A DNA stretch of 64,000 nucleotides from Iphione sp. A-MEVVRFRX5 (lineage: Eukaryota), in assembly GCA_976226885.1 (NCBI GenBank), contig OZ320321.1:26970001-27034000 (forward strand), given 5' to 3'. Every line of letters begins with the position of its first letter. The stretch's first letter is position 1. Shown here piece by piece: positions 5,801 to 49,459 of the stretch. Below the pieces are notes generated by a model. It was not told the DNA's origin, did not search any database, and saw only the letters and a list, made by a program, of their open reading frames with translations. Made by a program: the position numbers and the translations under genes.

Positions 5801-6230
5801 CAAGTTTGTGAATGTCTGCATCTGCTTTATTAAAGAGAATATAAGGAGTGTTTTGTTAAATGTTTTGGAATAAGAATCTAAGTGTGAGTCCTGCTAAAGT
5901 AACACCATCTTTGAACATATCAATACCATGTTCAAAAAAGAATTCTGAATGTTTTTGTATAGATGCTATGAACGGTTGGACATCTTTATAGTTATAATAA
6001 ATTAAGTAGTCTCTGAATGTTTGCATGTCTTTTTTTTTCCAAACCTCCTGACATAATTGATAATTTTGTTTAGAGATGGTTTGCTGGTTTAGTGAACTGT
6101 AAAAAGCACTCCATGGAGCAAAAGAATTATTGTTTAATTTATGAATATCATCCATTCATTCATAATGAAAGAATCCTTTATGATCTTTTTTGAGAAAAGC
6201 TTTTCAATAATTTGCATACAAATAGTTGAA
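2858..6230 (-). pseudogene. polB: Polinton/Maverick (adintovirus) protein-primed DNA polymerase B, frameshifted and interrupted by a Harbinger insertion
   Basis: Motifs in the expected order: KGFFHYEWMD (~6170), DYLIYYNYKDV, VGGPSIIFH (~5775), the QFHGCYWHGHPC nuclease-like insert, LLGDSSYGK, CEMDTDSLY, and C-terminal GLGYQYIKHKVCDDCVSMLPLDI* ending at 2858 on the far side of the insertion. Confidence 0.9.
3117..4214 (-). mobile_element. PIF/Harbinger DNA transposon, internally deleted
   Basis: 19-bp TIRs TAGCCGATTGTTAGTGTAC / GTGCGCCAACAATCGGCTA (3 mismatches). TTA target duplication at 3114-3116 and 4215-4217. ORF 3761-4051 resembles a Harbinger transposase N-terminal HTH region (PALIQMCIFLRFLACGEF). 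Confidence 0.85.
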
Positions 6231-17464: not shown

Positions 17465-18640
17465 TCAACTTACATCAAGAAAATAGTCAAAATAAACAAG
17501 GGTGTTTGTTATGACTGTTTTAGCTGCTTTTATATTTATTTCTTTTGGTAGAAGACCAATCTGAGTGTGATGGTATTTTTCTCCGTCCACTGTAATATAT
17601 AGACCAAAGACAGATGATTTGTATCCTTTGTGCTTTGCTAGGGCTGAAAGAGCTTTCAGGTTTTTCTGTATTGGTATAGCTTCTGTCGGTAGGTCCTCCC
17701 TTATCCACATCCCAGGGTGTTTCGCCAATAGATTGAAGCGATTTTTAAATATTGAATCACGCTGCTCAACAGTAGAGAAGACAATATGAACTGGTGGTGT
17801 GTTTGATTTGTCTACAACCTGCCCACGCGATATGGAACTATCTTTCATGGAAGGGATGATGTCCCTGAGAATTTGAGCAATTTGAGTTTTGACTGACATT
17901 TTATTGTCAACAGTTGCACCATGAAGAATCAAGTTTGCCCTTCTTTCCCTAATCTCGTTGTCAAGATTTGTGTTTTTTATTTCATTCAGTTGGGTCTTAA
18001 GTTGCTGATTTTCTCCTCGTAGTGACTGTATTTCTTGTTGAGCTTTAGCAAGATCTGCTTTAAGCTCCTCAAGTTTAATGGAGATTTCTAAACTTTCATT
18101 ATTTGAGGAGTTTACAGTAGCCTCTAGACCAGTCATGGTTGGTTGCGCAGATTTGTATGACGATTTTTGGTTGGATACTGAGCTGTTTTGTGTTTGTGAG
18201 AGAGAGTCAATAAGCTGCTTCAACACTGATATTGCCTCATTTGGAACATTTGTGCAGTTAGCGCTTATATTAGTGTTATTTGTTTTGTTAGTATTGTCAA
18301 AGTTCGGACTTATCTGGTCTGAGTCATTCACCCGTGCGTCATTGTCCACGTTGACCGGGACCAGTGAGGAGGGTGACCCGTTAGCTTGACCAGCTTGACC
18401 ACCGTCTGAGCCCTTGTTTGCTCCTTTGTCCGGTTTCGTTGGTGTTGTTCCCTTATTTCCTCTCATGTTCTTGCCTTCTCCAGCCATTTTTCGGTTCAAT
18501 GTTTGATATACAGCAACTAATCTGTCTAATGGCATATTTGCAATGAGTATTTTCCTACTAAGACTTGAATTTTTCAGAATAATCCCGTCTCAACGCGGGA
18601 GCGCACCCTTTACACGTCCTACTCGGTTGACGCCATTTTG
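17465..18640 (-). mobile_element. LINE 5' end: GC-rich 5' UTR plus an open ORF1 (coiled coil + RRM); ORF2 absent
   Basis: The 356-aa ORF has a heptad region followed by ERRANLILHG, PVHIVF, WIREDLP and ITVDGEKY, typical of invertebrate CR1/L2-type ORF1. Confidence 0.8.
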
Positions 18641-21598: not shown

Positions 21599-23387
21599 TA
21601 ACTACAGCATCCTGCACAGTAAAAATGCTCAGCGTACACTCCTCGAGACCATCTGTTACATAGTACTGGCTTCATGATGTTATTTCACCCTTGATTCAAA
21701 AATAAGTTATAGTGCTTTTATCACAGATACTACAATAAATTGAATTGGTCATAGATACCTTAAAGAGAAAAGTCATTTATCACGGGTATACAGATGACAT
21801 TGAAAACCAGTTCCTATAAAAATAACGACTTCCAGTGTAAGCTCTACTAGACCCTGTAAGTACTGACTTCAAAATGCTATACTTTAGTGGGTTACAACTT
21901 CAGTAACAACACACAGGTATTACTATTTAACGTTTAAAATGACTGCTCATATCTCCTGTTGGATATCCTATAACAAATCACCACTTACTGTCTGAGGGAC
22001 TGGAGCAAGCTTAGATGTTGTCGTCAGAATTTCCACTGTCCTTCTCTGAGTATTAACACAATTCACAGGTTGGTTTTCTTGGTGTAGCTCCTCCTACTGC
22101 CTACATCACAAGTACATGATAAATGAGGAGACAAACAGTCATATATCAAGGCACCCCAATGGGAAATACTGGACAAAAACTCAAATCTTTGTGCATCACG
22201 GGACAACATCAACCGGTGCATGAAGGCTCTAAACACCAGGTCACCAAACAACTGGGACAAGCATTGTGGAGGAGTATATCACAAATGTGTCAATGTGTCA
22301 AAAGTATCATGACTTCACAAAAGGAAAAACACAGTGTTGTACCTGGGTGGCTGACAATCTCACGATGGCTCCATTACTCAACAAGAGGAGAAGGATAAAA
22401 AGGCATTGCCTGACTGGACCAATACTAGACATTACATCGAGGATGAGCTCCACAAAGATCTGCCATACAGGGAACCGATCAGAGCTAAGGACACCCGTCC
22501 ATTTGCTGAACAGTGGGAAACAACTTTCTCTTGGGGAATCTAGCAAAGTAATAAACAAAGTAATAAACATTTTGGAGAAGCTAGCAAATTAATAAACAAA
22601 GTAAACATTTTGGGAATAGATGGTATGTTGTGTCAGCATGCAGTAGCCGACGGGGAAGGTGAATACAAATGATAGGGACACACTATTTGAACCAGGAAGT
22701 AGTGAATCACGAGCTGACTTTTGGAAATGTTTCAGGTTAAAGTCACAGAGTCAGATGACAGGAGGGATAGGAAAGATTACAGTGTCATTATTATGGAACT
22801 TAGGATTTATTTAGACTTGATTTGTTTTGATATATATTAATCTTCTTCAGTTACAGATTTTTCAGCCTCAGTCCTTCCAGTAGTGAAGGTAAGATACTCA
22901 CTCTAAATTATACTTTACTATACATGGATCTGACCTCCACTGACTAGCACGAGCAGCCATCACAGTAGACACTTAAACCTGGGCAAATACAGAGACGTAT
23001 GTATGGCATGTTAATTAAGATTCTTCATGCAAGTTCTGAAGCACTGTATGTTCAAAAAAGGCAGTTTGAAGGTATAGGTAGTCCAATAGATGGCATTCAA
23101 GTGAATTTGATTGTTATAATTATGTGATATTATGGGCTGCAGATTATGTTAGGGTTGGTGGCTAAGTACAGTTGAACCTCGACAACTAGATCCCCATCAA
23201 CCAGACTACTGTGACAAGCGGTCTAAGCTTGAGAGGATGGAAATATTTCAGTTGAATTTTGTCTCAGACATCTGGATATCAACTCGCCCAAGATGTTTTG
23301 TGAAAACATTTGATCCTGGCATGCACATCCTCTATAGGCACAACACTAAAGTTTGGATGACCTCTCTTCTGTGGGACGATTTCTTAC

Positions 23388-25658: not shown

Positions 25659-26099
25659 GTATGCATTGTAAAGTACTGCAAAGGCACTGAGTATGAAGTC
25701 AATTTCAGAAACATTGTTGCACTTTCCAAGACTCATGTGCCTAGATAGATTGAAGATGAGGAGGGGATGTAGTGAGGAAGAAAAGAGTCCCAAAATCATT
25801 TTTTGTGAAGTTCCAGGGAACTGGGAACATTTACAGGAAGGATTGAAATAGACAACAGTTCTTGGAAATAAGCAGTGGGGGATTGAACTGAATCATTTAC
25901 AGGATGTGATTCCATTTGTTTTGTGTGGACTGGTCGTAATGGTGAATGTATTAGTTGAGGATGTATTGGTTTGTGGTACTGTCAATATAATTACTGCATA
26001 TAGCTACTTCATTAACAGATATTGATAGGAACGAGGTTCTCATTAATACATATTAAAGTCAAACCTCCTAATGTGGAATTGTGACATTATTGTAAAGTG

Positions 26100-26540
26100 G
26101 GCCAATAAAGTTGCTGTGAACACCAAAGTTACTGGTTCCAAACTGTTTATTTCCTTCCCAAACCAGTGTTTATATAGCCCTTCTAAGTGCTAATCCACCA
26201 ATCAGAGGCCTAGACTCACTGACTAACCAATCAAAACACAGTTGCATTAATTACAACAATGTATCATACCAGTAAGAATGTTTTTAGCCAATAAGTACAC
26301 TTTCCTTTATAAAAGATACAGAGTAACAAGTTGTAGAATGTTTTCCACTAATCAGAGAGCTCCCCCATATTAGGAGATATGGGATGATATCTCAGTAACC
26401 AATCACAGCTTTAATACCTAATATGGGAGATGGGGTGATCTCCCACCAGCCAATCAGAGTAGAGTAACTTAGTAGTGGAAATTTCCACTAGATCATCAAC
26501 CAATCACAGCACAGAAACACAGTAGTGGAAATTTCCATGA
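26100..26540 (+). promoter_or_regulatory. Cluster of 7 CCAAT boxes plus two GGAAATTTCC palindromes
   Basis: CCAAT at ~26102, 26198, 26227, 26288, 26399, 26450 and 26500 (five are CCAATCA). AGTAGTGGAAATTTCCA occurs twice (~26471, ~26521). Confidence 0.5.
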
Positions 26541-26689
26541 GGTCATCAAACTGTACTCATTGGCCTCTAAGTGTATGTGGCATCAGAAGTTGCACTCATT
26601 GATCCCAAGTCTTGCACTCAATCACACCTGTTATTAGCATTGTAACTAAACCTAGGCTTTAGCCTACACTCTCCCCTGCTTAATCTCAG

Positions 26690-27459
26690 TGTAACACAGT
26701 AGTGTTATGTTGCGGACATTCGGACGATCGGACGTCCGGATGTCGGATATCATGTGACGGACGTACGGACATTCGGTCATTTGGACCAGGCGGACATTCG
26801 GGTATTCGGACGTCCGGGTCTGGGACATCATATTGCGGACAATTGAGTTTTACTAAACTACTAATAGAACGTGTTATGTCTTTATTGTAATGGTAAAGCA
26901 AAAGAAAGAGAGTTCTATTGTACAGTGTATAGATATAAGTCTTTTAACAAGGATCCTCGATTCACAGACAACAGGTGTATCATGTTGCTGACATGGCGCC
27001 ATCGACAGTCTGGGAATCGACATCCCACACACCAGTAGACACTCATAAACTATGTTCAGGTGACAGGTTAGTCTAAACAAACATTGTGTCGGAGTGGGGA
27101 TTTCGAGGCACTTCCAGGATGGGTAGTGACAGCTTTCACATCCATCATCGAAGGGTGCTAGGGTGGGACCGAGGGTTAATGTAATTCTTGACCTATCCCA
27201 ACCCAAGGGCACGTGCTCAGGTCGAAGGTCCGGAGACCTATGACCTAAGGTTAGGATATGTCACACACTTTGTGCTTAGGTTGTGAACTATGACCGGGAG
27301 GGTGCTAACCTCTGACATAGGGACGTGAACTATCTGTATATAATGTCTTGATCCCCTCACCACTTTTCGGAGAGCTCTGATCTGCCACCTTGTAGTGTCT
27401 ACCTGCTGAAATAAAGATCAACCAACTTGGAAACCTGTGTCGTCTTGAGTTGTGTTACA
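26690..27459 (+). mobile_element. Solo LTR, family B
   Basis: TGTAACAC...GTGTTACA flanked by a TCAG TSD (26686-26689 / 27460-27463). TATATAA and AATAAA near the 3' end. Homologous to 33628-34072. Confidence 0.9.
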
Positions 27460-27689
27460 TCAGACATGGGTATTCAAGAGAAGACGGTACTCACCCCTCA
27501 TGGTCTTGCATGAGGTTGACATTCCCACTCCCAAGGGCGGTCACCAGGAACAGACCTTCCACAAACTTTCGGAATATCCAGCCACACCAACTAAGTCTTT
27601 TGAATGGGGTAAACTTCTTAAATAACATAGTTCTTAATTAAAAAAAAACCAAACTTCCTAACTAACTGATTGTCCCCTCAGGGGGGGAC

Positions 27690-29600
27690 CTTATCTAAAT
27701 AGCCCAGAAATCTGGAGGAGCCACAGGGTGGGTATACGGAGGGGTGGACTGGCTGATGTCAAACACAGTGGGGGCTGTTTGTGAAAGCCGATGCCGATTA
27801 TCCTCTTGCTGAGTGTCCCTAAGCCATACTGTCGCTGGAAGAGGGGTTTGTTCTAACAGGTATTGCATTTGGCTAATCACCTCATTGTGTATGTCACCCA
27901 GGGCCATGGGGTCACCCCACACCTCAGCCAAAGGCCAGTGCATCCCTGGTAGAAGCAGGAAAGGTTGCTCTCTTAGAGGAGCCAGAATATTGGCCAGCAT
28001 AGCCCTGGTGTCCAAAAATTGGAGGACCCATGCAACCAACAATCTCCCCATCAGGCGCAAGCCCCCGTCAGCTCCACTCCACCCCTCTGGAGACCAGTGT
28101 ACCCACAGCGGCAGCCAGACACTTCCACAGGTTGGGTTCAATCTCATTACTGCTGGGAGGGGTGGTACGAGCCCCCCCCCCCCCCCAAGAAGTTGCTGGC
28201 TCGTTGATTTTTTGGGGCACCGTTCATGTCTCGCCTCTAGGCATTGCCTGGCCCTTCTGCAACAAAGGGCCACTGACGGGGACGCACCTGCTCTGGCTCT
28301 TCTCCCACTGTTGCCTCTACTTGCATCTGGGCCTCCTCTGTCATGAATGGCCACTGAGGGGGGCACACCTGCTCCTGGCCTTCCCTTACGGCTGCTTCCT
28401 CTTGCATCTGAGCCAGTCCTGTTCCTTTGTGATGTGGGGGTGGGTCAATAGATGACATGTTTGCCTCCGGTGTCTCGTTGAGCTGCTCTGGATGTCCCGC
28501 AGCCGCCGCCACTGCCTCTTGGGGTAGTGCTGGATCGGGGTCTGGCTTGTCCTCTTCTGACTCACTCCACTCCAGTTCCTCGAGTGGCTGGCCCTGGGCT
28601 GGGACATCCTGTGGTACCTCAGACAGGAAGCATTCCATAGCCTTCTGCATCACCTTCTCTCTCAGGTTCCATAAGTCCCTTGCAGCCACAATGGCCCACA
28701 TAACGTGGTCATTTGGCACCTTCGTTTTTTTCCCTCTCACCATGTACCAGGTGGAATAGTCCTCAGTATACTGGGTCTGTTAGGCACATTTCTTTGGCCC
28801 AGGGGTGATGTTGTCTCACATGGGTGAGCCATGAGTGGTTGTTGCAATGGGAGGTGCAACAAAATATACAGGCCATGGGATGCCTACTCTTTCCCTTGTG
28901 CTGCTCCCTGGTGTGGCGGCGTCACTTGTGCTGATCAGCATAGGGGTGCCGTTTCCCTCTCTTCTCGCAAATTGCACAGAGCACATGCCCCTCCAGTACA
29001 GGCTCATCTGGATCCAGCACCCTGCCCGGCATCCTCTGACTTTAAACTTCGGGGACAGCGTGTGGCGGTAATATAACTTCGGCTTACCGTCCTCCGGCCT
29101 GTCCAGTGAGAAAACTTCCTTATGTGCTGTGGCACCTGTTTTTGACAAATTTTGGGCTACCTCCATTGCCCGCCCAGTGAGAAAACTCCTCTTTGTGATA
29201 TGGCAGCCTCTCATACCGCCTTCTCAAAGATGCTGTCAACAGTGGGTACCACTGTCGCAAAGGGCATCTCCAAATATGGGAAGTCATAAAGTTTCGTGCT
29301 CAACTTTCGGGCTCCGTTCCATCTTGTATCATCTATAGAATGTAATCCATTCAAACCATTCTTTTTTATCTTTTCAGGCTGTCTCCATCCCAACCTCATG
29401 CCAGCCACGTCATATAATGAAGTTTGATGTTGTCACATCGAATTCTTCCTCATTTCAAGCCCAAAAGTTGATGTAGACAGCTGTTGTCGCTTCTCGCACC
29501 ATGTTATCGAGTATTAGGACTGATATCACTGCCCAGAAAACACCACCGCTCCCTCCCCAAAGGTTGGGACAACACTCAACTATCGCCGAACATGTAAGTA
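27690..29600 (-). pseudogene. Degenerate Gypsy integrase C-terminal region and 3' ORF
   Basis: AMEVAQNLSKTGATAHKE, GPKK..YSTWYMVRGKKTKV and LHQLLGLK fragments resemble a Gypsy integrase core/tail. Many frameshifts. Confidence 0.5.
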
Positions 29601-30137
29601 AGCCAGGTACTCTTAATTTCTTCCATTCCCTGAAATTAGAAGTGGGACTAAATTTTCTTGATGTCCCCCTTCCCCTGAAATTAGAAGAGATGTAAGTAAG
29701 GCCAGGTGCTCTTGATGTCTGTCACTGTGTCTTCCCAACCCAATCTCACCCCACCTTCTTTTTTTTTCAAGGGGGGTAGTGGATATCCTCAGTGAACAGT
29801 GTCCAATGACAACGGTCCTCTTGTCATCTCTCCTGCCTCCTTCAATACCGGATAGATCGTCTCTCTTCAAATAGAGCAGACCCTTGTCTTTCCTACTCTC
29901 AGGTTTCCCCCACCCACTGTTATGGACCTCTCCTATGGTGGTTATGCACCCACCAACCCACAGTAGGTGTCCCTTCTATTTTTTAAAATTTTTATCCCCA
30001 GACGTCCAATTTTTACCCCCATTAGGGGCTCTCCTGGCTACTAGCAGCTACCCCTTGCTATCTCCTTTCCGCAGGTATGGAGACCCCCTTATGCCCTTCC
30101 CAGGCGGACCCGCCATGGTCCTCGGCGAGGAATTCCC

Positions 30138-30953
30138 GTGAGTACTCTCCCTTTTAATACTGATCTTGATACCTGTTTCTACTTCCTCAACTCCATTGCC
30201 ATGCTTACTGACCCAATCTGTCATCCTCAATATCCTCTGACATCCCTATCTTTCCTTTTATTCCCCAGGGGTGTACCATTCGTGGACATCTACACTCCTG
30301 GCCCACACCTGCAGGGCACGGGGGTGCAAGCAAACCCTGAGGCCCCCTTCTTTCTGGATGTCCCTGGGCACCTGGCATTGTAGGGGCCAGACCATACAGT
30401 TGACATCACAGTGCTCCAGAGTGACGACATCATCGCTGGCATATTTGCCAGTGACCAGCAGCAGCCAGCCACTGTCATCTGGACGAGGGACCTTCCTCCA
30501 GCCACCATGGTCTGGCTCCAGGATGAGGCACTGCCCTCGCCCTGCTCCATGGAGGCCCTCCTGTCTGGCGCTGGAGAGGGGGGGATCATGGACACCACCA
30601 ATGCGTCCCACCCCAGCAAGGATTCTTCAGAGTGGGAACACGTGAGTTTGTCCATCAGCGTCCTCAACCCCGGCCTCACCTCTGATGACGACAGTGGCAT
30701 TGAAGGAAGCCAGGGTGACGATCCCCCCACTCCTGGTACTCCCACAGCATTAACGTACTCCAGCTACACATCCAGTAGTACAGAGGGAGCCTTCGGCCCC
30801 AGGCCCCCCCAGTGCCTCATCTATGTCCACCCCGGACACCCCCAGCCGCTCCCCTGTCATCCCCTCAGGGCTAGATATTCACGCTATGAAATGGTGGTGC
30901 AGTGGGCTGGTCCCCGGGGATGCTGTCTTCTGGCCAATTTACATTTCCTCTGA
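30138..30953 (+). pseudogene. GC-rich frame with a single internal stop (30381-30383); probable retroelement accessory ORF
   Basis: ORFs 30138-30383 and 30411-30953 are in the same frame. AATAAA follows at ~30989. A PPT-like TTTTTTTCAAGGGGGGTAG lies at ~29761-29779. Confidence 0.3.
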
Positions 30954-31495
30954 TGAGGATTGAACTCCACCTGTTCCCTTTATGCCAATAAACCTACCTA
31001 ACTTATATGTGTGGCTTACCGCCTCTTCTATTATCCCATACTCATGTAAGCAGCTCACAGCATAGGCCCCCCCTCTACAGGGACCTAACAGCTAAAATTA
31101 GTGCTAGATAGCAACAGATAACACTGTCACTTACCCACGGTAATGCCACTGCCACATATCTATACTTGTTGTCGCCTTGTCCACGAGAAGCACAATGACC
31201 ATTCACCTCGTAGACATGCAGTTAACATTATCAATAGGGGAAAATGCTGATGCGGTTTTTTCGGATTTGAAATACGTTTTATATAGAAAAGTATTTTCTT
31301 GTGTAGACTTGATTAAGATCTAAGGTGTAAAATTTGTAACCAACAAGAAATAAAGTTAAAGCACCAAAAATTGGTCATTCTCCTCGATCAGGAAATTTCA
31401 TGGTCTGTGACTGATGGCCATCGGCCATAGCCTATACCTATTGATATCAGAATATAAAGCATTAAAGTCCTGGCTTCGATCGCAACTGCATTGTC

Positions 31496-32505
31496 CTAGG
31501 GTAGTTCTCCGGGTTCCTTCCATCCCTTAGGATCTACAGCAAATAAACAGTGAAACTTCCACTGACCATATGAAGCCGCCATTTGGGGGTGAGCGCACTT
31601 CAGCTGTCCAGTCCAGGACTTGGACTCACAAGCGGTGCCTTTCCCGAGATACCATGGGCAGGCCATACGGAGGAGAATGCCACCCATAACCCTAAATGTT
31701 GCATAGAAGCTTGTTTAAGCTGGATATGTAGGATATATAACAGAGAACACCAACTTAACATACGCATTCACTCACCACCATAATGGTAACAGAACAGGAC
31801 ACTTTACACAACGTTCCAGTACGTAGCATTGGAAGAGCGCGGGGCGGGCTTTCCAAACTTTGCTGCCACATACATTTTCAGATTCTTAGCCTAGATTGGG
31901 TACTTTCGGCGTGTTCTTTTAGTCAGAATCCTTCCCTACTAGTTTCCCTCTTCCATCATGTTCCTGTATTTTGCATCATTTCCTCGGCCATTTAATTTTC
32001 AGATAATATTTCAGGGATACTGGGCTTACTTATATAAAGCACATAGTACTTAGTCTGTCAGAACATTTTCTTCAGATCCCTGGGATACCATGTTCCAATA
32101 CCCCCCCCCCGGCAGGACCTTTCATCTTTAGAAGGGAGTTGGTTCCCCCCTAACGCTGGCTGCACTCTCGCATCCGACGTTCAGCCTGTTTTTGTCTGTA
32201 AAGTCCTACTTTGCCTTCTTCCAACTGGTCAGATTTATTGCGACGATAGATTTATTCTGACGATACTTCCTGCCACAAAAAAGAAGGACACAGGGGCGGC
32301 GATGGTTCTCATGTCTCTCCTGTGCTGTTGATGCACTCAGCACCTGCTTCCCCTCACAGCAAGGACAGGCCATTTGAAGAAGACAACTTTTTGAGGATAT
32401 CCTATGAATTTTCCAAAGGTGACAGTGCAGACCGCTCAATGAAGAACATTCCAATGAACAGATATCACAAATTGTCTGTGATTTTATGTTTATATATTTC
32501 AACAT
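31496..32505 (-). pseudogene. Possible decayed Cys-rich DNA transposase (KDZ/Zisupton-like)
   Basis: C2H2-like CDIC...HLWKIH, then CPCC, then GG....CP(H)G...ES across a frameshift. Weak and fragmentary. Confidence 0.25.
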
Positions 32506-34272: not shown

Positions 34273-35939
34273 TGACAATCCAGTGGAGGAAGTGAATGAG
34301 AGGATAACTTTCCTCTCACTACCCTACTGCTTTCGGCGTGAATAGAGAAGGATCTACCCAAAACCCATCCATTGAGACATTCGATGATTCTGATGTTGGA
34401 ATTCAACCTGTTGCGGACCTGGAAAAGACAACAACAGTACTGGATTTCTTCAGTGTGTTCACAGTTGACTTTATAGGACAACTTGTTACACAGACCACCG
34501 AATATGACAAGACTGAGACAAGCGCCCACCCAAAAAACATGAGGGAAAGTGGTCTGACATCACACCTGGACGCCTTTCGCAATTATTGGATAAACCATGC
34601 TGATGGGGTTTCTACGAAAACCAAGAATCAAAGGTTATTGGTCCACCGTACCAGAAATAGCCATGCCTATGTTTAATAGAGTCATGCCCAGAGATGTCTT
34701 CATCCAAATCATGTGGTATAAAGTACTAGCGTTTGGTAACCATAGAAACATTTCTATTGTAAATTTGTGATAGAACTGCAATTACAAATTTTTCTAGCAT
34801 TATATGAAAGTATTTGAATTAGTGTGTCTCTTTCTCCATTATCATATATATATGAATTTTGGTGGTTCCATTTCCAACAAAAAGACAGACGCTCTCACCC
34901 ACAGTGACTCCTCAACAAGCTCAATAAGACGAGTGGACTGGATATCCCATGCATTCAACAACATTACTGAGGCAGTATTTAAACCAAGATGTGAAATCGC
35001 CATAGATAAGATGATGATCAAGCACAAGGGTACTGTAAATGCCCAAGAAGTCTGTGAAATCGAGCCTAAAATGCTGAGCTCTGGCTGAAACTGCCACAGG
35101 TATGTATTAAGAGTATCCAGTATAGATATTGTGTCTCTCCCTAATAAAAAAAAATTGCAAAGAAAAGTAAATAGGCCAGATTACTTTCATATTCGTCTAT
35201 TTCAAAACCTTCGAATATTAGATTTTTTTTTATGAAGACATACAGTATAAACAATCTGTTTTGCAATGTATGTCCTCCAAGTCATCCTGCATTACGTAAG
35301 ATAGGAACGCTTGCCGACATCCCTATTTGACTCCATTCTTATGAGGCTACGTTGGTCTGCTGACATGTTAGGAAAATGCCATCATCTTTTTTGTGACAAT
35401 TTCTATAATACTGTTCATATGTTCGAATCCCTTCTTGGTTATAATAATTCTTGTTGTGGGACGGTTAGGCTTAACAGAAAAGGACTACCAAAGACAATCA
35501 TGGTAGAAAAACAGCTGAACATCAGGAACAAAGGTGATTGTTTATTGTCCAAAGCGGAAATCGAAAATTATCTGTACGGCATGACTGTAAGTAGTACACG
35601 TTCTATCTACCATCCACGGAAGCATTACGGAAGAAGGACCCTGAGACTGGCAAGTTCAGTAAGCAAGAAATTCCCTGTACTGATATTGTCATCGCAGACA
35701 ACGCTCATATGGGCACGGTGGATCTCTCAAACCAATTATATAAAAATTATTCCTTTGGTAGAATTATTCCCTACAGCTTTATGTGCCATCTGATGAGAGT
35801 TAAATTTCAAAGCAAATTCCCCTACCCATCCCAGACTAGTTGCATACAAGAAAAATACAATGATTCTACAAGTAAAAAACAAAGCAAGTGTGATTGTGGC
35901 CAAAGTGATGCCTATCTGTGCGCCGCGGGATGTTCCTGA
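34273..35939 (+). pseudogene. piggyBac (PGBD4-like) transposase pseudogene
   Basis: VLDFFSVF, GFLRKPRIKGYWST, EIAIDKMMIKHKG, HHLFCDNFYN, CGTVRLNRKGLP and HMGTVDLSNQL are piggyBac DDD-domain motifs. Frameshifted. Confidence 0.85.
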
Positions 35940-38801: not shown

Positions 38802-38824
38802 TGACGTCAGCAAGATGTATATAA
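38802..38824 (+). promoter_or_regulatory. Core promoter of the cystine-knot gene: CRE and TATA box
   Basis: Perfect TGACGTCA at 38802-38809 and TATATAA at 38818-38824, ~90 bp upstream of the ATG at 38912. Confidence 0.65.
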
Positions 38825-38911: not shown

Positions 38912-40295
38912 ATGGCTTTTAAAGTTCTACTTGCCCTTTGCCTTGTGGCAACTGTGCTTGGAGGTGAGTTTACTCTTTTACATAATGTAAAAAATAGTGG
39001 AAATCATACTATAGCTTTTAACTCTGTATCTGTATTTTGTCTCCATTTCTGGCCTGTTCATTAGTTAAGGGCAATACCAACCGGAGTATTTTAATGTAAT
39101 TCAACGTGTATATTTCCATCTTTCAGGTGTTGTTGTCCCCCGACGGGTAAGTTCTCTATTACGTGGTTATATTTGTGAATACGTTAAATAAGTCCTCTTG
39201 TACCATCTACCTTCGTCTGTATACCAAAGAAAACGAAAAAGAAACAAAAAAAGATAAAGATAAAGACGCGAATGTAGTCTTAATAACGCTACTATTGTAG
39301 ACAAAACAAATATATACCACATGCCTCAAATTTATTTTTCATAATACCACCAATCAAATGTAAACGTGGTGTCGCAATTATAAACTGTTACATATGTCAT
39401 TGGTAAAAAACAGCATCCCTGTATAACGGGCAATGACAATAAATTCAAATTCAAAATTCAAATATATTCAGGTCTTTAGTATGCTGATTTCCTAAAGATT
39501 TTGCTCTTTTACTTTATCGTTTTATCCAGGAGACCTGCAGAACGGTGGCTTTCCATCGCCGTGTTCATAAGAGAATCCAGCTGGGCCCTGGCTATGCCAA
39601 GACCTGTGTTGGTGTCGTAGTTGACAAGAGATGTGAAGGTTCTTGCAACAACATCTATGGTGGTCTTCTTGGTTATGCTGGTGTAGGTGCCTATGGTGCA
39701 TATGGTCCTGGACTTGGATATGGTCATGGACTTGGATATGCCCATGGACTTGGATATGGAAAAGGAGCCTATGGACTTGGATATGGCCGTGGACTTGGAT
39801 ATGGAAAGGGAGCCTATGGACTTGGATATGGCCGTGGACTTGGATATGGAAAGGGAGCCTATGGTCTTGGATATGGCCGTGGACTTGGATATGGCTATGG
39901 AGCCCACGGACTTGGTCTTGGACATGGTATTTACGGAGGCCTTGGCCCTGTCAACAACCGCTGCTGCAGGGCACATGGTACTACAACGGTTTCTCAGTGG
40001 GTCAAACTTAACTGCGGCAAACATGGAGCGAAAAAGGTCCAACTCACCGTGGACGTTCCAAGACGGTGTGCCTGTAACTATTGGTAAGTGTTTCAAGTGT
40101 TTTAAAAGCAGAAACTACTTCGTTATATTTGCAAAGCTAAAATGGTATTTAAAAACTTTCTTCCATATAAAGCCTGCCATTTTTAGGCAAAATTGCATTA
40201 TTTAAGGCACCAAAGTGGCCTAGACACCTAAAAGTAAGCTGAAAATATTAATTCTTTACCACTTACAAAACCTATTCATTTTCAGCAAAGCCTAA
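38912..40295 (+). CDS. Secreted 10-Cys cystine-knot protein (GPA2/bursicon/CTCK-like framework) with a 105-aa Gly/Tyr-rich GLGY-repeat insert; 211 aa
   Basis: Exons 38912-38963, 39127-39146, 39530-40083 and 40286-40295 all have canonical GT/AG and consistent phases. Signal peptide MAFKVLLALCLVATVLG. Mature Cys pattern C-x22-C-x8-CEGSC-x105-CC-x15-C-x17-CAC-x2-C-KA*. AATAAA at 40432. Confidence 0.9.
39746..39880 (+). repeat. Coding 45-bp x3 tandem repeat (GLGYGKGAYGLGYGR)
   Basis: Three near-identical 45-nt units within exon 3, differing only at synonymous positions. Confidence 0.95.
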
Positions 40296-41965
40296 ATCTT
40301 CTGGGACGTGTGAGGATATTCACGAGACTAACCAATCAACACGGGCATTCACTAACTATGCTTTCGACACCATTATAAACGTGGAGCTCCATGGTGTCAT
40401 CCTATTACCTAAGTGCTTATTCAATGATTTCAATAAAATGATTCAGTGTAAACTATACCTGAAGTCCTTGCTGTTATTTCGCATGACCAACAGATGCTTT
40501 GCAAGCGAAATGCTACTAGTAGTTAGTTGTATTAATGCTGATTATACTGATTTATATTGATCATGGAAATGGTTTTTTTTCATAAAAAAATTTTTCTGTA
40601 AGAATTTTTATTGATCCTGATAAGGATTATGTATTTATCCTGATAATAACATGTATTGATCCTTTATGCTGTAATGATTTTGATAATTTGTAATGGTGAG
40701 AACAAAGTAATCAACTAATCAGGCCATCAAAATCTCACCTTTGAGTCACTAATTTTCATATGTCATCTATAATCATAAGAATACAATAATGGAGTCAGGG
40801 ATGTGAAGATCGGATTGATAAAAGGTTATAAACATCATTTAAATCATCCAAATAGCACACTAATGTCATAACCTGTTAAAATATTGCTTTTAATTACGGA
40901 AAATTGTAAGCGTGGTTATAGGTCAATTTATCTAGTCAGGAATACATGTAAATGAGTCATGACGTGTCACATGACGACTACTCGATAGATCATACTTCTG
41001 TAAATCCCATTATGACCCGGGGTATACAGGGCAAACTTTCTTTCAGACTCAATTGCCAGAATAAATTATTCTGCACATCGTAAGCAAATACAGCAAACAC
41101 CAAGCCAGAGGAGATTTCCCAGACGGAACCGTTCATATTACTCATGAGAGATTCAAATTAAAGTTCAAGTTCTTTATTTATGATCTCCATAAAAAGATAC
41201 AGAGCTTTCCATCATAAATGCCGACTGTTGCAATACAAAAGTGGGTAGATAAATTGTCACATGGCAGCGAATGGCTAAAAGGTAGTTTATAAGACAGTAA
41301 ATGTTAATGTTTTCAATACAAAACCTTTAGATCAGCACATATAGATAAGATAGATATTGCATGGATTGTAAAATATAATAATATATGATAACTGCTGTAC
41401 TGGTTATAACAGACTATGAGATCACAGTCAATGTTCCTCTCAGTGTATCACAGGTCATTTATACGATCACTGTATCCAGAGACAAAAAATAAAAATTCTC
41501 GGGGATTAATGCTACTATAAGTGACTACAGATGTCGTCTAATGTGACTGGATGGAGTGAGATAATAAAATTAGCCAGTCCCAAGCTTGGTCTTCTAAGCA
41601 GGTCTCGACTGTAGTTAACATACTCTCTAAATTTATACAATGCATGTCCAATAGATGTCTTTTCTGTCGCAATTGCTTTGCCATTTTATGTGTTTTAGGG
41701 TTTATATGTAAAATCTGTATATTTATGAAATATATATTTTGATAACTTAAAATTATGATAGGCATGAAAAGAATAGAAACTGACATAGGAGACAAAGCTT
41801 GGGACTGGATGATTTTTGTCTCTGTCAGGGGTTTGTCTCCCCTGTACGTTGATTACTAATGTCAACATTCTGTAGTGACTGGATGATTTTGGTCTCTCGT
41901 TTGCATTGGTCTCCCCTGTAACTTCCTATGAAGCACACAACATTTTATGAATGTTTTATAACGTT

Positions 41966-43899: not shown

Positions 43900-44870
43900 G
43901 CAGACGTGTAGGCTATATCTGTATGTACGGGAGACATACACATAAGTATTAGAGACATGCAAACATGTATGGGAGACATATGGATGTAAGGGAGACGTGC
44001 ATACATGTTCATGAGAAACATCCATGCATGTATAGACGTCATGCATGTTTGAATGGGAGACACATACAGTAAGACCTCACTATTCCAACACTGCATGGTT
44101 CCAAATGATTATGCCTGCAATAGTTAAGGTGGTGGAATAGTGAGGCAGCTGTATTTTAATGGATAAAGCTGAAGAATAGATATATAAATCTAATGAATAG
44201 ACAATATAAAAGTCATGCATGAATGAATGGGCAAACACATGAATTGCAAACATATGAACATTACTTGGGAGACATGTCGCAGCTGAAATGATTCCCCAAA
44301 CTGACAATGCCTATATATCGAACAAAATCTTAAACAACCAAAATTAGCAGTTATGGAGGATTGTACCTAAGTGTATGAGAAAAAGCGTCCATGCATATAT
44401 AGAATTCAGGCATACATGTTTGGGAGAGACATACATATGTAGTGGCTTATATACATGAATTGTAGGCTCACATATATGGATGGTAGACAATACATGAATG
44501 AGAAAACCACATGCTTATTTTGAGGACGCACATACATGCATGGTAGACGCTCACATGGGAATGGTAGACAAACATACATGAATGGGAGACATGCATGCAT
44601 GTATGAAATGCATACCATTGTAAGTGACATGCGAACATGCATCAGACACACACATACACATGTAATGGAGACCTGTTGGGAGTTTAAGGGCAAACATGTA
44701 TGGGAGACATGTACATGAATAGGGCTCATATGGGAGACATACATACCAGTATGGGAGACATGCATCCATGTATGGAAGACACACATACATTAATGGGGGA
44801 GATACATACACATAGGGGAGACACATACCACTAAGGTATACATACATACATACATACATACATACATAAA
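43900..44870. repeat. Degenerate minisatellite of GGGAGAC + (CATA/CATG)n units
   Basis: About 13 GG(G)AGAC cores in purine/pyrimidine-alternating sequence, ending in (TACA)n at ~44836-44866. Confidence 0.7.
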
Positions 44871-47800
44871 TGGGAGGTAGTTGACATGCACATAAGTCTG
44901 CAAATAAATCTGATTTGATTGTTTTCTTATCTCGTAAGTCTGAATAGAAAGATTTCTAGTCTCTGAAGTCTGGCGTCACATTCTTCTTGTCTCCCAGGTC
45001 TTATATCATTGTTTCCTCCTCAGCCACGCCCGAATGTTTTGTTCTTCTCATCTATTAATGATGAATTTTTTATGCTCTCAGTCTGAGCTGCGGGTGTGGC
45101 CAATGATCCTGTATTGTCCTCCTTACAGTACGTTTTCAAGTTTACCACCTGAATAACCCTTTCCAGATCCCTCGATAGAGTACTCTATTAGCCCACTGAA
45201 AGCTAAAATTGTATTGAAATACTCCCATAGTATGAGTTAATAACGTATTGAAGTAGAAATGCAGAGAAAAGGCTTGAAAATGCAAAAATTAGGTAAACAA
45301 ATGTTTGTTTTCAATTTGGAACGTTTGAAGACATCCTAGATTAGCCATGGGAATTGCTAATAGAATATATATATATATATATTGTATGGGTTAAATATGA
45401 ATTTAAAGTTTTTCATATAGCTAAATTAAAGACACCATGGTCGCCTCAAGGGCACTGTTAACTATATACACTATTCAGCGGTTAAGTAAAGATGTGTATC
45501 TATAACTGACGCCTCCTGGGAGCAAAATGGTTTTAAAAACTTTCATACCCTTCTATCAAAGTAACATGCATTACTAGATTAACTTTATTGACGAAGCCTC
45601 TGAGAACAAAGCCTCGTTATGGCGAAGTTTCCGATATTCACAGATTTCAAACCAATCTGCTCGATAAGGAAACGACAATAAGAGTCGGGGAAAGATCATA
45701 AAAAAACATGAGAATTATTGATAAACGAGTGTCTCTGATAGCAAAATGCCCCACAGTGAAGTGATCCCACAAAACATGCCTACTTCGTACAAAGAGCTGC
45801 ACCCGTCTATGCATTTGATTCGATCAACGATACGTCCAAACTTGAGCGATGGATTGTGCTGATTTTATAGAACTGCTGGCATTTTGAATATGCCACAAAG
45901 TGAGTATACACTCGCCCTGATATATGGATTTAATCTCTTAAAGGAACCTGATGGTACGCCGGAATGAACGAACGCTGTGACTGTTAAAGCGAGACGCCGT
46001 TGACCAGATATGGCATGTAGTGATCTTTCGTAATACTATCCATAGCCGGACCACACTATTGTACCCACCTCACCCCTGAGATTTAGGTAAATGCTGACCT
46101 GGGAGATTTCTACATAAGTATGAGTGCATTACACCATGCCCCGTGTATCTTATAATTGCACATTAGAAGTGATCCTAAATATGAGTCCTCCTTTCACTGT
46201 AAACAAGTATAATTCTGCCTCCCTCTTGTAGGGTCGTAGACATTTACTTTTATTAGTTATTATTGTCTCGGGTTGACATTCTCTAATTGCTAAAAAAGCA
46301 TCACTTTTTACCGCATTTCCCTTCCAACAGTGTCTAGATATGTCCTCTCCTCGTGTATCGTCTTCTGTAATTTTTCTTATCGTCAATAGCTGTCTACCTT
46401 TAAAAAAAACTCTGGGTTATGATGCCGGCTTATCATACGCCTTGGGATGTAAATGACTATTTTCCGTTCTCATCGTGCACTGTGTTCTCTGTCTGATGGT
46501 AAAAGAAACGTGTGTAGATGCATATTATTTCACTTGTTGCTGTTTCAGATTGCAGAAGATGCATGAGTTGATATGGATATCATTTTCACTGCCTGATTAT
46601 TAATGAAGCCCGGGATTGTAAAAATGCATGACTTTATATCATGCAGTACATTCTCCATTCTAAAAAAGCATGATTTCCAATGATGTGTTATATATTCTCT
46701 ATAATAATGAAGAAAGATTTCATACTGTGCATTACATCTCCTAAGAGAGCGCCAGCTCACGTTAGATTTCAATTTTACCTTCTGATTAGAACAAAGCATG
46801 AGTATATTTTTCGTATTCCGCTTTCTATTATAAGGGATCGTATTTCATGCCATGTCAAATGTTCATGTTCATGCCATGTTTAAATGAAGCATTATTTCAT
46901 ATCATGTGTTATATTCTCTTTTATAACGAGTGCATTACCGTGCATAACGCTCCCTAAGAGAAGCAGCAGCTCGTGTTGCGTACGCGTCTGCTCCCTAAAA
47001 TAGCATCGTGGACGGAATGCATGAGTCGTGGGAGTCTGGCGCACAAGCCAAAACTGCGTAGGAGGTAGGTTTCGTGCGTGTGTGCGTGTACGTGTGTGTC
47101 TCGTACTTGTGTTACCTCGCATGTGTACAAGCCATGCGGGCTACATGAACAGCCGCTGTGCATTTTTCGTACGTTGGAGCACGAGCCTTTGTGGTTGGAT
47201 GTGTCTGTGTGTGTGTCTGTATGTGTGGCAGTGGACACACACTCAATACGCAAAAGAGAAAGTTCACGCGCACTACGGGGCGGCGCATGCGTCACTCCGT
47301 GCACATGCGCATCTCGACCTTTCCGGGCGTCTACACGAAAGGCCAGCCAAGTGTTTCCAAGATCCGGGGTCCTTCATGGAATCCTCCCATGGTTTATGGT
47401 TCAGGTTGGACCTACATTGGGGACAACTGGGAACCGGAATCAGAACATAATGTTTCATATGTTTCCTTTGATTAATCATCTTAAGGTCAACTGTCGTCTT
47501 CAAAATGTTGTCGACTAATTTATAAGCCTACTTTGGAAGTGTCTCGAACTTCCTTTTCTTCTACATGAGTCATCGCCCCCTCCCTCTTTTTGTGTTGATT
47601 ATGGATGGTTATACAGACCCACTAAAGTAAATATTGACATCGGTAAGTTCCGAGCATGTCCCTGTCGAACCCCATCCCCAATGCGTCCCCCCGTCCAACC
47701 CCCCCCCCACAATCCCCTCTCCCCCGCCCCTCCCAAACATATAACCCTTCACGTACGGAGCTGCTCGGACATAAGGCGAGGTGAAGTTTGATACAAACTC

Positions 47801-48113
47801 TGAGCTGCTTCTACAAGGCCCTCCTACTATCCACCTACCTGTCCTTTCAGCTGTCCGCCCAACTATCTGTCCGCCTGCCTGTATACGTGTCCGTCCACCT
47901 ATTCATTCTCCTGTCAGCCAACCTGTCCTTCTATCTGTCCGTACAGCTGTCTGCCCATCTGTCCATTCTACCAGTTTACCTGTCCTTCTTCCTGTACGCT
48001 TATCGTTCCATTCTCCTTCACGCCCATCCACCCGCTCACCTGCACGCCCACCTGTCTGCCCACCAGTCGGCCTGCCTGCGCGTCTTCCTGTCCGGGACGC
48101 CAGTGTCCTCCAG

Positions 48114-48209
48114 ACCATGACGGCCGCCGCCCTGGAGCCCCCGGAGGAGGTGGACCTCACGCCGCCAGAGGGCACCACGGATGTGGAGGCAGCCGCTGAG
48201 GAGGCACAG
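48114..48209 (+). other. Orphan GC-rich exon-like segment (96 nt; TMTAAALEPPEEVDLTPPEGTTDVEAAAEEAQ)
   Basis: A long pyrimidine-rich upstream tract ends in CAG. The segment is an open phase 0-0 frame with GC3-rich codons, followed by a GT donor at 48210. Confidence 0.4.
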
Positions 48210-48216
48210 GTGGGAA

Positions 48217-48278
<62 letters not shown>
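48217..48278. repeat. Compound microsatellite (GT)n(GA)n
   Basis: Directly visible. Confidence 0.95.
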
Positions 48279-48281
<3 letters not shown>

Positions 48282-49459
48282 AGATTGCGTGTATGTAATT
48301 TGTGGGGGCACATGAGCAAGTAACTTAGATGAATGTATAGAAGTCAATAGTTTTCTCTATGTACGAAATCCATCAAATTACGTGTATTGATTATGTAGTT
48401 TAGTTTTTCATATTATGTGCTAGTGGAAACGATTTTATACATTCTTCTTATAGATGTGCAGGTTAATCAGAATAATACAAGTGTATATAGTCCCTAATCT
48501 GAATGATATTTTATTTATGTTTTGATTGGTTAACCCCTGAGGCCCAGCTGCGCTTTTCGCAATTTGTGTCAGGAAATCTTCATGGTACATGTAATTTACA
48601 TAATTTTTTTGCTCTCTAATCAACCATAGTAATTGGGACCTTTTTTAGAACATCAAGGGTCCACATTGATTACAAAGTATGTTATGAGGCTACAAATGTT
48701 TTCACGGATGATGGAAGGTAAGGACAGTTGAAGTTGGCAGAAAATTATCCAGTTAAATTAGTGGTATTATTCTGGGTTGCCACTGTACAACCAATCCAGC
48801 ATATATATGCTCCTCTGTGCCTGCATATCATACAACTACAACTCACTTTGTGGGCAACTCAACTAGGTGGGGCAGCTTATTTTTTCCAGGTTCCAATTGT
48901 GTATTTTCTATGGTGTATACAACTCGGGTAGGATGGCAACTCAAAGTAAACGGCGAAAATTTCTGGTTCCATTGGGGGTCATAATTCTGAGTTGCTACTG
49001 TATGCTCAGACACAAAGAAGATAATATGTGTGTAGCAGTGCTGTGTGATTACACGGTTTTCGGCTGTCTATGGATATATTGCCTAAGTATGTTATGCTGT
49101 GTGGTAACATATTTGTATAGCTATCCACCAGATTATAATCATTGACTATTGTTTGTGGAATGGTGATTACACTTTACATATAACATTAAAGGCACCTTTT
49201 TGAAGTGTGTACTATTAACAACTGGGTTAATAATAGATTGCTTCTAATAAAACCAAATTTACCTACAAAAATCACTTTTATTAAGTCGGATAAGTGTTGA
49301 AAACAAAAATACAAGCATATATATGGACTGTGAACCTAAAATATCAAATACCAATGACAATTCCAATTCTGTATCATGAAAAACGCCCTGTTTAGGGCGA
49401 TGATCAGAAAAGAATTGTTTTCGATTCATTTCAACTCAATATTTCAAATTTCATTGATT

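What the first reader, a model, noticed from the sequence alone, without database searches (positions are those of the whole stretch)
38912..40295. Chimeric secreted protein: hormone-type cystine knot carrying a Gly/Tyr structural-protein domain in loop 2
Seen: four exons splice into a 211-aa ORF with a signal peptide and ten mature cysteines spaced C-x22-C-x8-CEGSC-x105-CC-x15-C-x17-CAC-x2-C. The 105 residues between CxGxC and CC contain 44 Gly, 18 Tyr and nine GLGY motifs, plus Lys/Arg/His. Established: CxGxC..CC..C..CxC..C is the cystine-knot signature of glycoprotein-hormone, bursicon, DAN and mucin/vWF CTCK domains. As I recall the GPA2 sequence, it has this 10-Cys order, x8 before CxGxC, a CxC-x2-C end, and a loop 2 of only ~25-30 aa. 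GGLGY/GLGYG repeats characterise lamprin, insect chorion/cuticle proteins, shematrins and DOPA-crosslinked cements. Inference: a dimerising knot may have been co-opted as a crosslinking or assembly hub for an extracellular material (cuticle, tube, jaw, cement, egg case). I do not recognise it as a described family.
Basis: partly seen in the sequence, partly recalled or inferred. Interest (0 to 1): 0.92.

Follow-up and report, generated by a model that had tools for sequence, protein, structure and literature searches.

The report
Cystine-knot protein with Gly/Tyr-repeat loop
A well-formed four-exon gene in an unidentified invertebrate-like genome encodes a small, very basic secreted protein whose ten cysteines follow the order of the hormone subunit GPA2, but whose middle loop is a 105-residue glycine/tyrosine repeat of the kind seen in hard or sticky animal materials; no relative was found in any database searched.

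Summary
Exons 38912-38963, 39127-39146, 39530-40083 and 40286-40295 (+), all GT-AG, give a 211-aa protein. It has a signal peptide and ten mature Cys spaced 22, 8, CEGSC, 105, CC, 15, 17, CAC, 2. The loop holds 44 Gly, 18 Tyr and nine GLGY.

The Cys order is that of the 10-Cys, 8-residue-ring knot proteins. A published table gives human GPA2 as C-16-C-8-CxGxC-26-CC-13-C-15-CxC-2-C, and loop 2 is 15-31 aa in every protein listed there. Language-model features of the whole protein, the N half and the C half each land on DAN/CTCK/glycoprotein-hormone/bursicon clusters.

Nothing firmer could be obtained:
- Pfam gave no hit and PDB sequences none (17-19).
- No true homologue appeared among 1.84 billion representatives (29, 30).
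- The AlphaFold model was unusable (25, 45).

Ten Cys is an even number, so covalent dimerisation through the knot is not expected. The "crosslinking hub" idea is therefore weakened; crosslinking through loop tyrosines is more plausible.

Best reading: a lineage-specific knot-stapled Gly/Tyr loop protein for an extracellular material. The function is inferred only. The scan noted similar genes elsewhere in this genome; those notes are unchecked.

The parts
38802..38809 (+). TGACGTCA palindrome (CRE-like) just upstream of the TATA box
   Evidence: pattern search; function not tested
38818..38824 (+). TATATAA, putative TATA box about 90 nt upstream of the ATG
   Evidence: sequence
38912..38963 (+). 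exon 1: start codon and signal peptide (residues 1-17 plus one base); phase-1 donor G|GTGAGT
39127..39146 (+). exon 2: 20-nt micro-exon (residues 18-24, ending in the dibasic PRR). It is needed to keep exons 1 and 3 in frame. Acceptor tttcag|G, donor CGG|GTAAGT
39530..39646 (+). exon 3, first part: N half of the knot (residues 25-63). Holds Cys 1 (C27), Cys I (C50) and the ring half CEGSC (C59, C63)
   Evidence: framework compared; atlas features
39647..39961 (+). exon 3, middle: loop 2 (residues 64-168). 105 aa with 44 Gly, 18 Tyr, nine GLGY, 11 K/R/H and no acidic residue
39726..39915 (+). 45-bp (15-codon) tandem repeat, 4.2 copies, 93% matches. Three identical GLGYGKGAYGLGYGR units differ at two synonymous sites
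39962..40083 (+). exon 3, last part: C half of the knot. Holds CC (Cys II C169, Cys 4 C170), Cys III (C186), the ring half CAC (C204, C206) and the first two bases (TG) of the Cys IV codon
   Evidence: atlas features (0.88, 187 shared features, PF00007 cluster)
40286..40295 (+). exon 4: 10 nt. Completes the codon of the tenth Cys (TG|C, C209), then Lys-Ala-stop
40432..40437 (+). AATAAA polyadenylation signal, 137 nt after the stop codon

Best explanation
This is a real, intact gene for a small (about 20 kDa mature), strongly basic (pI about 9.8) secreted protein. Its two Cys-rich ends most likely fold together into an 8-residue-ring cystine knot of the GPA2/DAN 10-Cys type. By homology of position the disulfides would be C59-C204 and C63-C206 for the ring, C27-C170 through the ring, C50-C186 between fingers 1 and 3, and C169-C209 from the end of loop 2 to the C-terminus. 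The knot would pin the two ends of a 105-residue Gly/Tyr/Leu repeat (GLGYG plus a K/R/H every 7-8 residues) next to each other. The low-complexity segment would then be a closed, protease-shielded loop projecting from the end of the knot opposite the two beta-hairpin fingers. I infer that the protein is a building block of an extracellular material (cement, tube, cuticle, chaeta, jaw or matrix) rather than a hormone. In this reading the loop supplies multivalent Tyr/cation-pi 'stickers' for condensation or beta-sheet assembly, and Tyr supplies DOPA or dityrosine crosslinks. The knot supplies a rigid, stable, possibly non-covalently dimerising core. Shown: the gene model, the composition, the Cys framework and the recent repeat expansion. 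Inferred: the fold, the disulfide map, any dimerisation and the material function.
For: The gene model is coherent, with canonical splice sites, a signal peptide, a TATA box and a polyA signal. Splicing of the last 202-nt intron restores the tenth Cys at exactly the x2 spacing that the framework needs. The Cys order and type are identical to hGPA2 in the table of PMC3224965; loop 1 is 22+8 against 16+8, loop 3 is 15+17 against 13+15, and only loop 2 is out of range at 105 against 15-31. The framework never arises in 2,000,000 shuffles and is unique in the six-frame translation of the window. ESM Atlas features of the whole protein, of residues 1-46 and of residues 138-184 of exon 3 each give DAN/CTCK/GPH/partner-of-bursicon clusters as all top hits. 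The C half scores 0.88 with 187 shared features against a PF00007 cluster. The low-confidence AF2 model places two long beta-hairpins exactly where fingers 1 and 3 belong. For the material reading: pI 9.76 with 33 K/R/H against 4 D/E and no N-glycosylation sequon (and the sequence); a loop composition like the basic Gly-rich DOPA cement proteins Pc-1/Pc-2, KRMP, which has a basic domain plus a Gly/Tyr domain, and the GLGYG-containing squid ring-teeth segments; and a very recent in-frame repeat expansion typical of structural repeat proteins. Unchecked first-reader notes report further knot proteins with Tyr-rich loops elsewhere in this genome.
Against: No profile or structural confirmation of the knot was obtained. 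Pfam gave nothing at E up to 10 for exon 3 or either half. No PDB chain matched. The AF2 model has pLDDT 46 and its Foldseek matches are meaningless. The atlas scores are in the range the tool calls 'leads only', and they probably read the same Cys pattern as a human reader does. No homologue of the knot halves was found among 1.84 billion representatives, in the word-indexed searches of 5.8 billion clusters or in the metagenome scan. There is therefore no conservation, covariation or phylogeny to lean on. There are no transcript, tissue or proteomic data, and the organism is unknown. The function rests on composition only.
Confidence: 0.5

Rival explanations
1. The ends are not a cystine knot. 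The protein is a Gly/Tyr-rich matrix or cement protein (KRMP/shematrin/Pc-1-like class) capped by unrelated disulfide-rich basic termini, and their Cys spacing mimics the GPA2 framework by convergence.
For: No Pfam, PDB or fold hit and no detectable homology to any knot family among 1.84 billion proteins. KRMPs already show a 'basic domain plus Gly/Tyr domain' design.
Against: All ten Cys fall in the GPA2 order, including the CxGxC with its Gly, CxC, an adjacent CC and a final C at x2. Both halves separately give cystine-knot clusters by features. The framework appeared in 0 of 2,000,000 shuffles.
Confidence: 0.2
2. It is a signalling ligand: a divergent GPA2/bursicon/DAN-like hormone, cytokine or BMP antagonist whose loop 2 has expanded by repeat slippage, with the loop neutral or modulating receptor or matrix binding.
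For: The Cys framework is that of hormone and antagonist families. There is a CRE-like TGACGTCA beside the TATA box and a dibasic PRR site before the first knot Cys.
Against: There is no sequence similarity to any GPA2, bursicon or DAN protein, although such families are normally recognisable across bilaterians. There is no N-glycosylation sequon. Half of the mature protein is a GLGYG repeat with regularly spaced basic residues. Loop 2 is 3-4 times longer than in any listed member. Reported paralogues with other Tyr-rich loops (unchecked) suggest selection on the loops themselves.
Confidence: 0.12
3. It is a cationic glycine-rich host-defence protein (antimicrobial or antifungal effector) stabilised by a disulfide core.
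For: It is secreted, has pI 9.8, is rich in Gly, Tyr and His, and has no acidic residues in the loop. A peptidoglycan-recognition-protein exon lies 24 kb upstream.
Against: The PGRP is distant and there is no cluster. At about 20 kDa with a 105-aa regular repeat it is larger and more regular than typical Gly-rich peptides. No homologue supports this reading.
Confidence: 0.1
4. The gene model is an artefact or the locus is not expressed: a chance ORF over a coding-looking microsatellite, or a young pseudogene.
For: All three forward frames and the antisense strand are open across the repeat. There is no transcript evidence and no database copy of the protein.
Against: Four exons join in frame only with the 20-nt micro-exon and have consensus splice sites. 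The model also has a signal peptide, TATA box, Kozak context, polyA signal and an intact 10-Cys framework completed across an intron. The antisense ORF has no ATG and no signal peptide.
Confidence: 0.05

Closest known systems
GPA2 (glycoprotein hormone alpha-2), 10-Cys 8-residue-ring cystine-knot proteins
   Same: Same number, order and type of Cys: C-n-C-8-CxGxC-loop2-CC-n-C-n-CxC-2-C. Exactly 8 residues lie between Cys I and the ring, Cys II/4 are adjacent and Cys IV sits at x2. All Cys are expected to pair within the chain.
   Different: Loop 2 is 105 aa of GLGYG repeat against 23-30 aa. Loops 1 and 3 are a few residues longer. There is no detectable sequence similarity, no N-glycan sequon and an extreme basic charge. 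It is not an orthologue.
DAN/NBL1, gremlin and cerberus (BMP antagonists)
   Same: 8-residue ring plus the loop1-loop3 disulfide. DAN also has 10 Cys with a II-IV bridge. DAN-family clusters are the top atlas feature hits.
   Different: In DAN-family proteins Cys II is separated from Cys 4 by two residues (C-2-C) and loop 2 is 15-18 aa. There is no PF03045 hit.
CTCK domains of gel-forming mucins, von Willebrand factor and Norrin
   Different: As I recall them, CTCKs have 11 Cys with C-x-CC and use the extra Cys for interchain bonds, and the polymer-forming part lies N-terminal to the knot. Here there are 10 Cys, a plain CC, and the repetitive part sits inside loop 2. There is no PF00007 hit.
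Basic Gly/Tyr-rich material proteins: sabellariid cement Pc-1/Pc-2, KRMP and shematrin of pearl oysters, squid suckerins, lamprin
   Same: Secreted, basic, with Gly/Tyr repeats containing GLGY-type motifs. Tyr is often converted to DOPA or crosslinked (lamprin and shematrin from memory).
   Different: These are compositional classes, not homologues. None is described with its repeat enclosed in a cystine-knot loop. The exhaustive search returned only low-complexity matches.
Horseshoe-crab coagulogen
   Same: Precedent (from memory) for a cystine-knot-superfamily protein that is itself the monomer of an extracellular gel.
   Different: It has an NGF-like knot, not the CxGxC/CxC 8-residue ring. 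It polymerises after proteolysis and has no low-complexity repeat.

Membership tests
8-residue-ring cystine-knot superfamily (GPH/GPA2/DAN/CTCK/TGF-beta type) | Ring half 1: C-x-G-x-C with the conserved Gly | tested here: met
   CEGSC at residues 59-63; definition from PMC3224965
8-residue-ring cystine-knot superfamily (GPH/GPA2/DAN/CTCK/TGF-beta type) | Ring half 2: C-x-C near the C-terminus, downstream of a Cys 4 that can thread the ring together with an upstream Cys 1 | tested here: met
   CAC at 204-206; Cys 1 is C27 and Cys 4 is C170, in the required order
8-residue-ring cystine-knot superfamily (GPH/GPA2/DAN/CTCK/TGF-beta type) | Match to a curated profile (Pfam PF00007 Cys_knot, PF03045 DAN, PF00236 Hormone_6) | tested here: not met
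   No family at E up to 10 for exon 3 (184 aa) or either half alone. The insert-free construct could not be submitted, because a non-contiguous protein has no reference, so the fairest version of this test was not run.
8-residue-ring cystine-knot superfamily (GPH/GPA2/DAN/CTCK/TGF-beta type) | Three-dimensional knot fold with two beta-hairpin fingers | tested here: inconclusive
   The single-sequence AF2 model has pLDDT 46; hairpins are predicted at the expected positions but without confidence. Foldseek against PDB was uninformative. No homologues were available to build an alignment.
8-residue-ring cystine-knot superfamily (GPH/GPA2/DAN/CTCK/TGF-beta type) | Actual disulfide connectivity (1-4 through the ring formed by 2-5 and 3-6) | not testable with these tools
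   Needs mass-spectrometric disulfide mapping or a solved structure
GPA2 (orthologue of the hormone subunit) | 10 Cys arranged 1, I, 2, 3, II-4 adjacent, III, 5, 6, IV | tested here: met
GPA2 (orthologue of the hormone subunit) | Recognisable sequence similarity to GPA2/GPH-alpha, and loop 2 of about 23-30 aa | tested here: not met
   No knot-family hit in the exhaustive phmmer search and none in PDB sequences at E up to 10. Loop 2 is 105 aa.
CTCK (mucin/vWF/Norrin type) | Odd or extra Cys (C-x-CC plus a C-terminal Cys) available for interchain disulfides | tested here: not met
   Only CC is present, and ten Cys is an even number. The CTCK Cys pattern is recalled from memory and was not checked with a tool.
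Gly/Tyr-rich structural proteins (suckerin, shematrin, KRMP, Pc-1/2, lamprin) | Secreted, with a Gly/Tyr-dominated tandem repeat and a basic charge | tested here: met
   This is a compositional class, not a homology family.
Gly/Tyr-rich structural proteins (suckerin, shematrin, KRMP, Pc-1/2, lamprin) | Presence in an extracellular material; Tyr modification to DOPA or dityrosine | not testable with these tools
   Needs proteomics and amino-acid analysis of the animal's secreted structures

The most novel reading that the evidence does not exclude
A lineage-specific family in which a GPA2-type cystine knot has been turned from a hormone scaffold into a 'staple' that closes a low-complexity Tyr-rich sticker loop, giving a new kind of building block for an extracellular material. 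The codon of the tenth Cys (Cys IV) is split by the last intron. Retention of that intron would end the protein at ...CACNYW and leave Cys II unpaired, which is the situation the cited paper suspects gives interchain bonding in gremlin, cerberus and BMPs. Splicing could therefore switch the protein between a closed monomer and a covalently dimerising crosslinker.
Probability: 0.35. Interest if true: 0.8.

Novelty: new variant of a known kind. Interest (0 to 1): 0.62.

Why it matters
If the fold and the material role hold, this would be the first case I know of in which a growth-factor or hormone-type cystine knot carries a structural low-complexity domain inside one of its own loops. That would link two well-studied but separate fields: cystine-knot ligands and Gly/Tyr-rich biological materials. 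It would show a new way of building extracellular materials, in which a repeat is topologically closed and end-protected by a disulfide knot. It would also offer a compact, recombinantly tractable design for biomimetic adhesives or hard polymers. Finally, it would give a concrete example of a hormone scaffold being recruited to a structural role, or the reverse. The claim can be tested directly with RNA-seq, proteomics and disulfide mapping.

Tried and rejected
- **Pfam on exon 3 and on each knot half:** no hit.
- **PDB sequence search, whole protein and halves:** only noise.
- **The search for homologous proteins:**
  - The whole exon 3 gave two low-complexity hits.
  - The N half had no candidate sharing words with it.
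  - The third search went on a PGRP exon to identify the organism and found nothing.
- **Exhaustive phmmer against 1.84 billion representatives:** 11 hits, all Gly-rich low complexity, none over the knot.
- **Metagenome locus scan:** nothing.
- **Exact look-up of nine ORFs of the window:** none is in the collection, so the genome is not in the protein database and the organism stayed unidentified.
- **Single-sequence AlphaFold and Foldseek against PDB:** unusable.
- **Search for a paralogue in the window:** tblastn and a six-frame regex found none. The weak hit at 22109-22270 contains a stop and is noise.
- **Antisense 195-aa ORF over the repeat:** rejected, because it has a TTG start, no signal peptide and no splice context.
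- **Rfam and tRNA scans of the window:** empty.
- **Literature searches for a described knot-plus-Gly/Tyr architecture:** none found.
- **Not done:** Pfam, HHpred or AlphaFold on the insert-free core. A non-contiguous protein has no reference in these tools, and I did not type it.

Full report
**1. The observation**

The region was read directly and the four proposed exons were joined in a script.
- The exons are 38912-38963, 39127-39146, 39530-40083 and 40286-40295 on the + strand.
- Their splice sites are canonical: G|GTGAGT, tttcag|G, CGG|GTAAGT, tatccag|G, TG|GTAAGT and ttttcag|C.
- The introns are 163, 383 and 202 nt long and lie in phases 1, 0 and 2.
- The CDS is 636 nt, which gives 211 aa.

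The first 17 residues form a typical signal peptide. The 20-nt micro-exon is required to keep the signal-peptide exon in frame with the large exon.

The mature cysteines lie at 27, 50, 59, 63, 169, 170, 186, 204, 206 and 209. The 105-residue stretch between CEGSC and CC holds 44 Gly, 18 Tyr, 14 Leu and nine GLGY motifs.

Several features fit a real transcription unit:
- a TATA box at 38818;
- a G at -3 and a G at +4 around the ATG;
- AATAAA 137 nt after the stop codon.

**2. More than chance**

- The loop is built on a 45-bp (15-codon) tandem repeat, with 4.2 copies at 93% matches.
- Three consecutive 15-aa units are identical in protein and differ at only two synonymous positions. The array therefore expanded recently and in frame.
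- Shuffling the 82 non-loop residues 2,000,000 times never gave the full Cys framework.
- In the six-frame translation of the whole 64-kb window, the C-half pattern occurs once, and the two halves co-occur only in this gene.
- The antisense ORF and the other forward frames are open merely because the repeat contains no stop codons. None of them has a start codon, a signal peptide or a splice context.

**3. What the cysteine framework is**

A comparative paper on 8-residue-ring cystine-knot proteins (PMC3224965) tabulates the arrangements.
- Human GPA2 reads C-16-C-8-C-x-G-x-C-26-CC-13-C-15-C-x-C-2-C. Invertebrate GPA2s vary only slightly.
- The window protein reads C-22-C-8-CEGSC-105-CC-15-C-17-CAC-2-C.

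Every Cys class of that scheme is present, in the same order:

| Class in PMC3224965 | Residue here |
|---|---|
| Knot Cys 1 | C27 |
| Cys I (loop 1) | C50 |
| Knot Cys 2 and 3 (ring half CxGxC) | C59, C63 |
| Cys II (next to Cys 4) | C169 |
| Knot Cys 4 | C170 |
| Cys III (loop 3) | C186 |
| Knot Cys 5 and 6 (ring half CxC) | C204, C206 |
| Cys IV (two residues after the ring) | C209 |

Loop 2 is 15-31 residues in all proteins listed there; here it is 105. By positional homology the disulfides would be 27-170, 59-204, 63-206, 50-186 and 169-209. This map is an inference.

The same paper states that members with an even number of Cys pair them all within the chain and are not expected to make interchain bonds.

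**4. Independent support for the fold, and its limits**

Three ESM Atlas feature look-ups were run:
- the whole exon-3 protein, score 0.73;
- residues 1-46, score 0.75;
- residues 138-184, score 0.88 with 187 shared features.

All three returned clusters named DAN, CTCK, glycoprotein-hormone beta or alpha-2, and partner of bursicon as essentially all top hits. The tool itself rates scores under 0.9 as leads. Only the C-half result falls in the band where a high shared-feature count favours true membership, and that calibration was not measured for parts of proteins.

The conventional tests found nothing or were unusable:
- Pfam gave no family for exon 3 or for either half, even at E up to 10.
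- phmmer against all PDB chains gave only noise.
- The single-sequence AlphaFold model had pLDDT 46. It did place two long hairpins where fingers 1 and 3 should be.
- Its Foldseek matches were meaningless.

The fairest test would be a profile search or a fold prediction of the core with the insert removed. It could not be run, because a non-contiguous protein has no reference in these tools.

**5. Relatives**

None was found.
- The word-indexed search of 5.8 billion clusters returned two low-complexity hits, and nothing for the N half.
- The exhaustive phmmer search of 1.84 billion representatives returned 11 hits at E < 0.001. Inspection showed all of them to be Gly-rich low-complexity matches to the loop.
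- A metagenome scan found nothing.
- Nine ORFs of the window are absent from the 15-billion-protein collection. This genome is therefore not represented there, and the organism could not be identified.
- There is no paralogue within the window.
- The scan's own unchecked notes list, elsewhere in this genome, a [quoted passage not shown] and an [quoted passage not shown].
- Another unchecked note mentions an annelid-type cuticle collagen.

I could not read those loci. They are leads that this is a gene family in an invertebrate.

**6. How it most likely works**

The mature protein is about 20 kDa with pI 9.76. It has 33 K/R/H against 4 D/E, the loop has no acidic residue, and there is no N-glycosylation sequon (and the sequence).

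The loop is a regular array of GLGYG with a basic residue every 7-8 positions. This combination resembles three groups of known proteins:
- the basic Gly-rich DOPA-bearing cement proteins of sabellariid worms;
- the "basic domain plus Gly/Tyr domain" KRMPs of pearl oysters;
- the GLGYG-containing segments of squid ring-teeth proteins.

If the ends form the knot, residues 63 and 169/170 sit side by side. The repeat is then a closed loop that emerges opposite the two fingers.

My best reading has three parts:
- The knot is a rigid, protease-resistant staple.
- The loop is a multivalent Tyr/cation-pi sticker that condenses or stacks.
- Tyr oxidation cures the material.

Any dimerisation of the knot would be non-covalent.

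One speculative point concerns the last intron. The codon of Cys IV is split by it (TG|C). Retention of the intron reads ...CACNYW-stop. That would leave Cys II unpaired, which is the condition the cited paper suspects gives interchain bonding in 7- and 9-Cys relatives.

**7. Rivals**

- **Convergent Cys-rich caps on a Gly/Tyr matrix protein (0.20).** This is kept alive by the lack of any profile or fold hit.
- **A divergent hormone or antagonist with a slipped loop (0.12).** It is disfavoured by the composition, the charge, the missing glycosylation sites and the absence of any similarity to conserved hormone families.
- **A cationic Gly-rich defence protein (0.10).** The only contextual hint is a PGRP exon 24 kb away.
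- **Artefact or pseudogene (0.05).**

**8. Novelty and verdict**

No paper in the searchable library combines a cystine knot with a Gly/Tyr structural repeat. No database protein shows the architecture.

I class it as a new variant of a known kind: an 8-residue-ring cystine-knot framework of GPA2 type with a structural low-complexity domain in loop 2. This depends on the fold being confirmed.

- Observation: confirmed.
- Interpretation: partly supported.
- Interest: 0.62.

Noticed in passing
window 14396-14683 (-) and probably 14791-15093 (-): Exons of a peptidoglycan-recognition protein. The ORF at 14396-14683 matches Pfam Amidase_2 (PF01510) at E 5.9e-13. The upstream ORF looks like the preceding part of the domain by eye but gave no Pfam hit.
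   Followed up: partly
window 35311-35793 (+): Fragment of a piggyBac-type transposase (PF13843 DDE_Tnp_1_7, E 1.1e-07), apparently broken by stops.
   Followed up: partly
window 4397-6155 (-): A run of ORFs includes a weak Vsr-like endonuclease motif (PF03852, E 0.0012, ...FHGCYWHGH...). It is probably a degraded mobile element.
   Followed up: no
window 26000-32000: An island of about 50% G+C in a window that is otherwise about 38% G+C. It has many overlapping ORFs on both strands and no Pfam hits. It may be a repeat or an old insertion.
   Followed up: no
window 17468-18535 (-): An intact 356-aa ATG ORF, rich in Ser/Asn/Gln, with only sub-threshold coiled-coil-type Pfam matches (THOC7, CCDC93). 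It is not in the protein collection by exact look-up.
   Followed up: partly
window 38802-38809: A perfect TGACGTCA (cAMP-response-element consensus) lies 9 bp upstream of the TATA box of the knot gene. Its function was not tested.
   Followed up: no
window 40084-40285 (last intron): The codon of the tenth Cys is split TG|C by this intron. Read-through gives Trp and then a stop (...CACNYW*), that is, a 9-Cys product with one unpaired Cys. This could be a splice-controlled switch.
   Followed up: partly
window 47900-48350 and 44400-44960: CA/GA-type microsatellites and Cys/Val/Tyr-rich pseudo-ORFs produced by simple repeats. They account for the weak tblastn hits to the Gly-rich loop near 47650-47755.
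   Followed up: no
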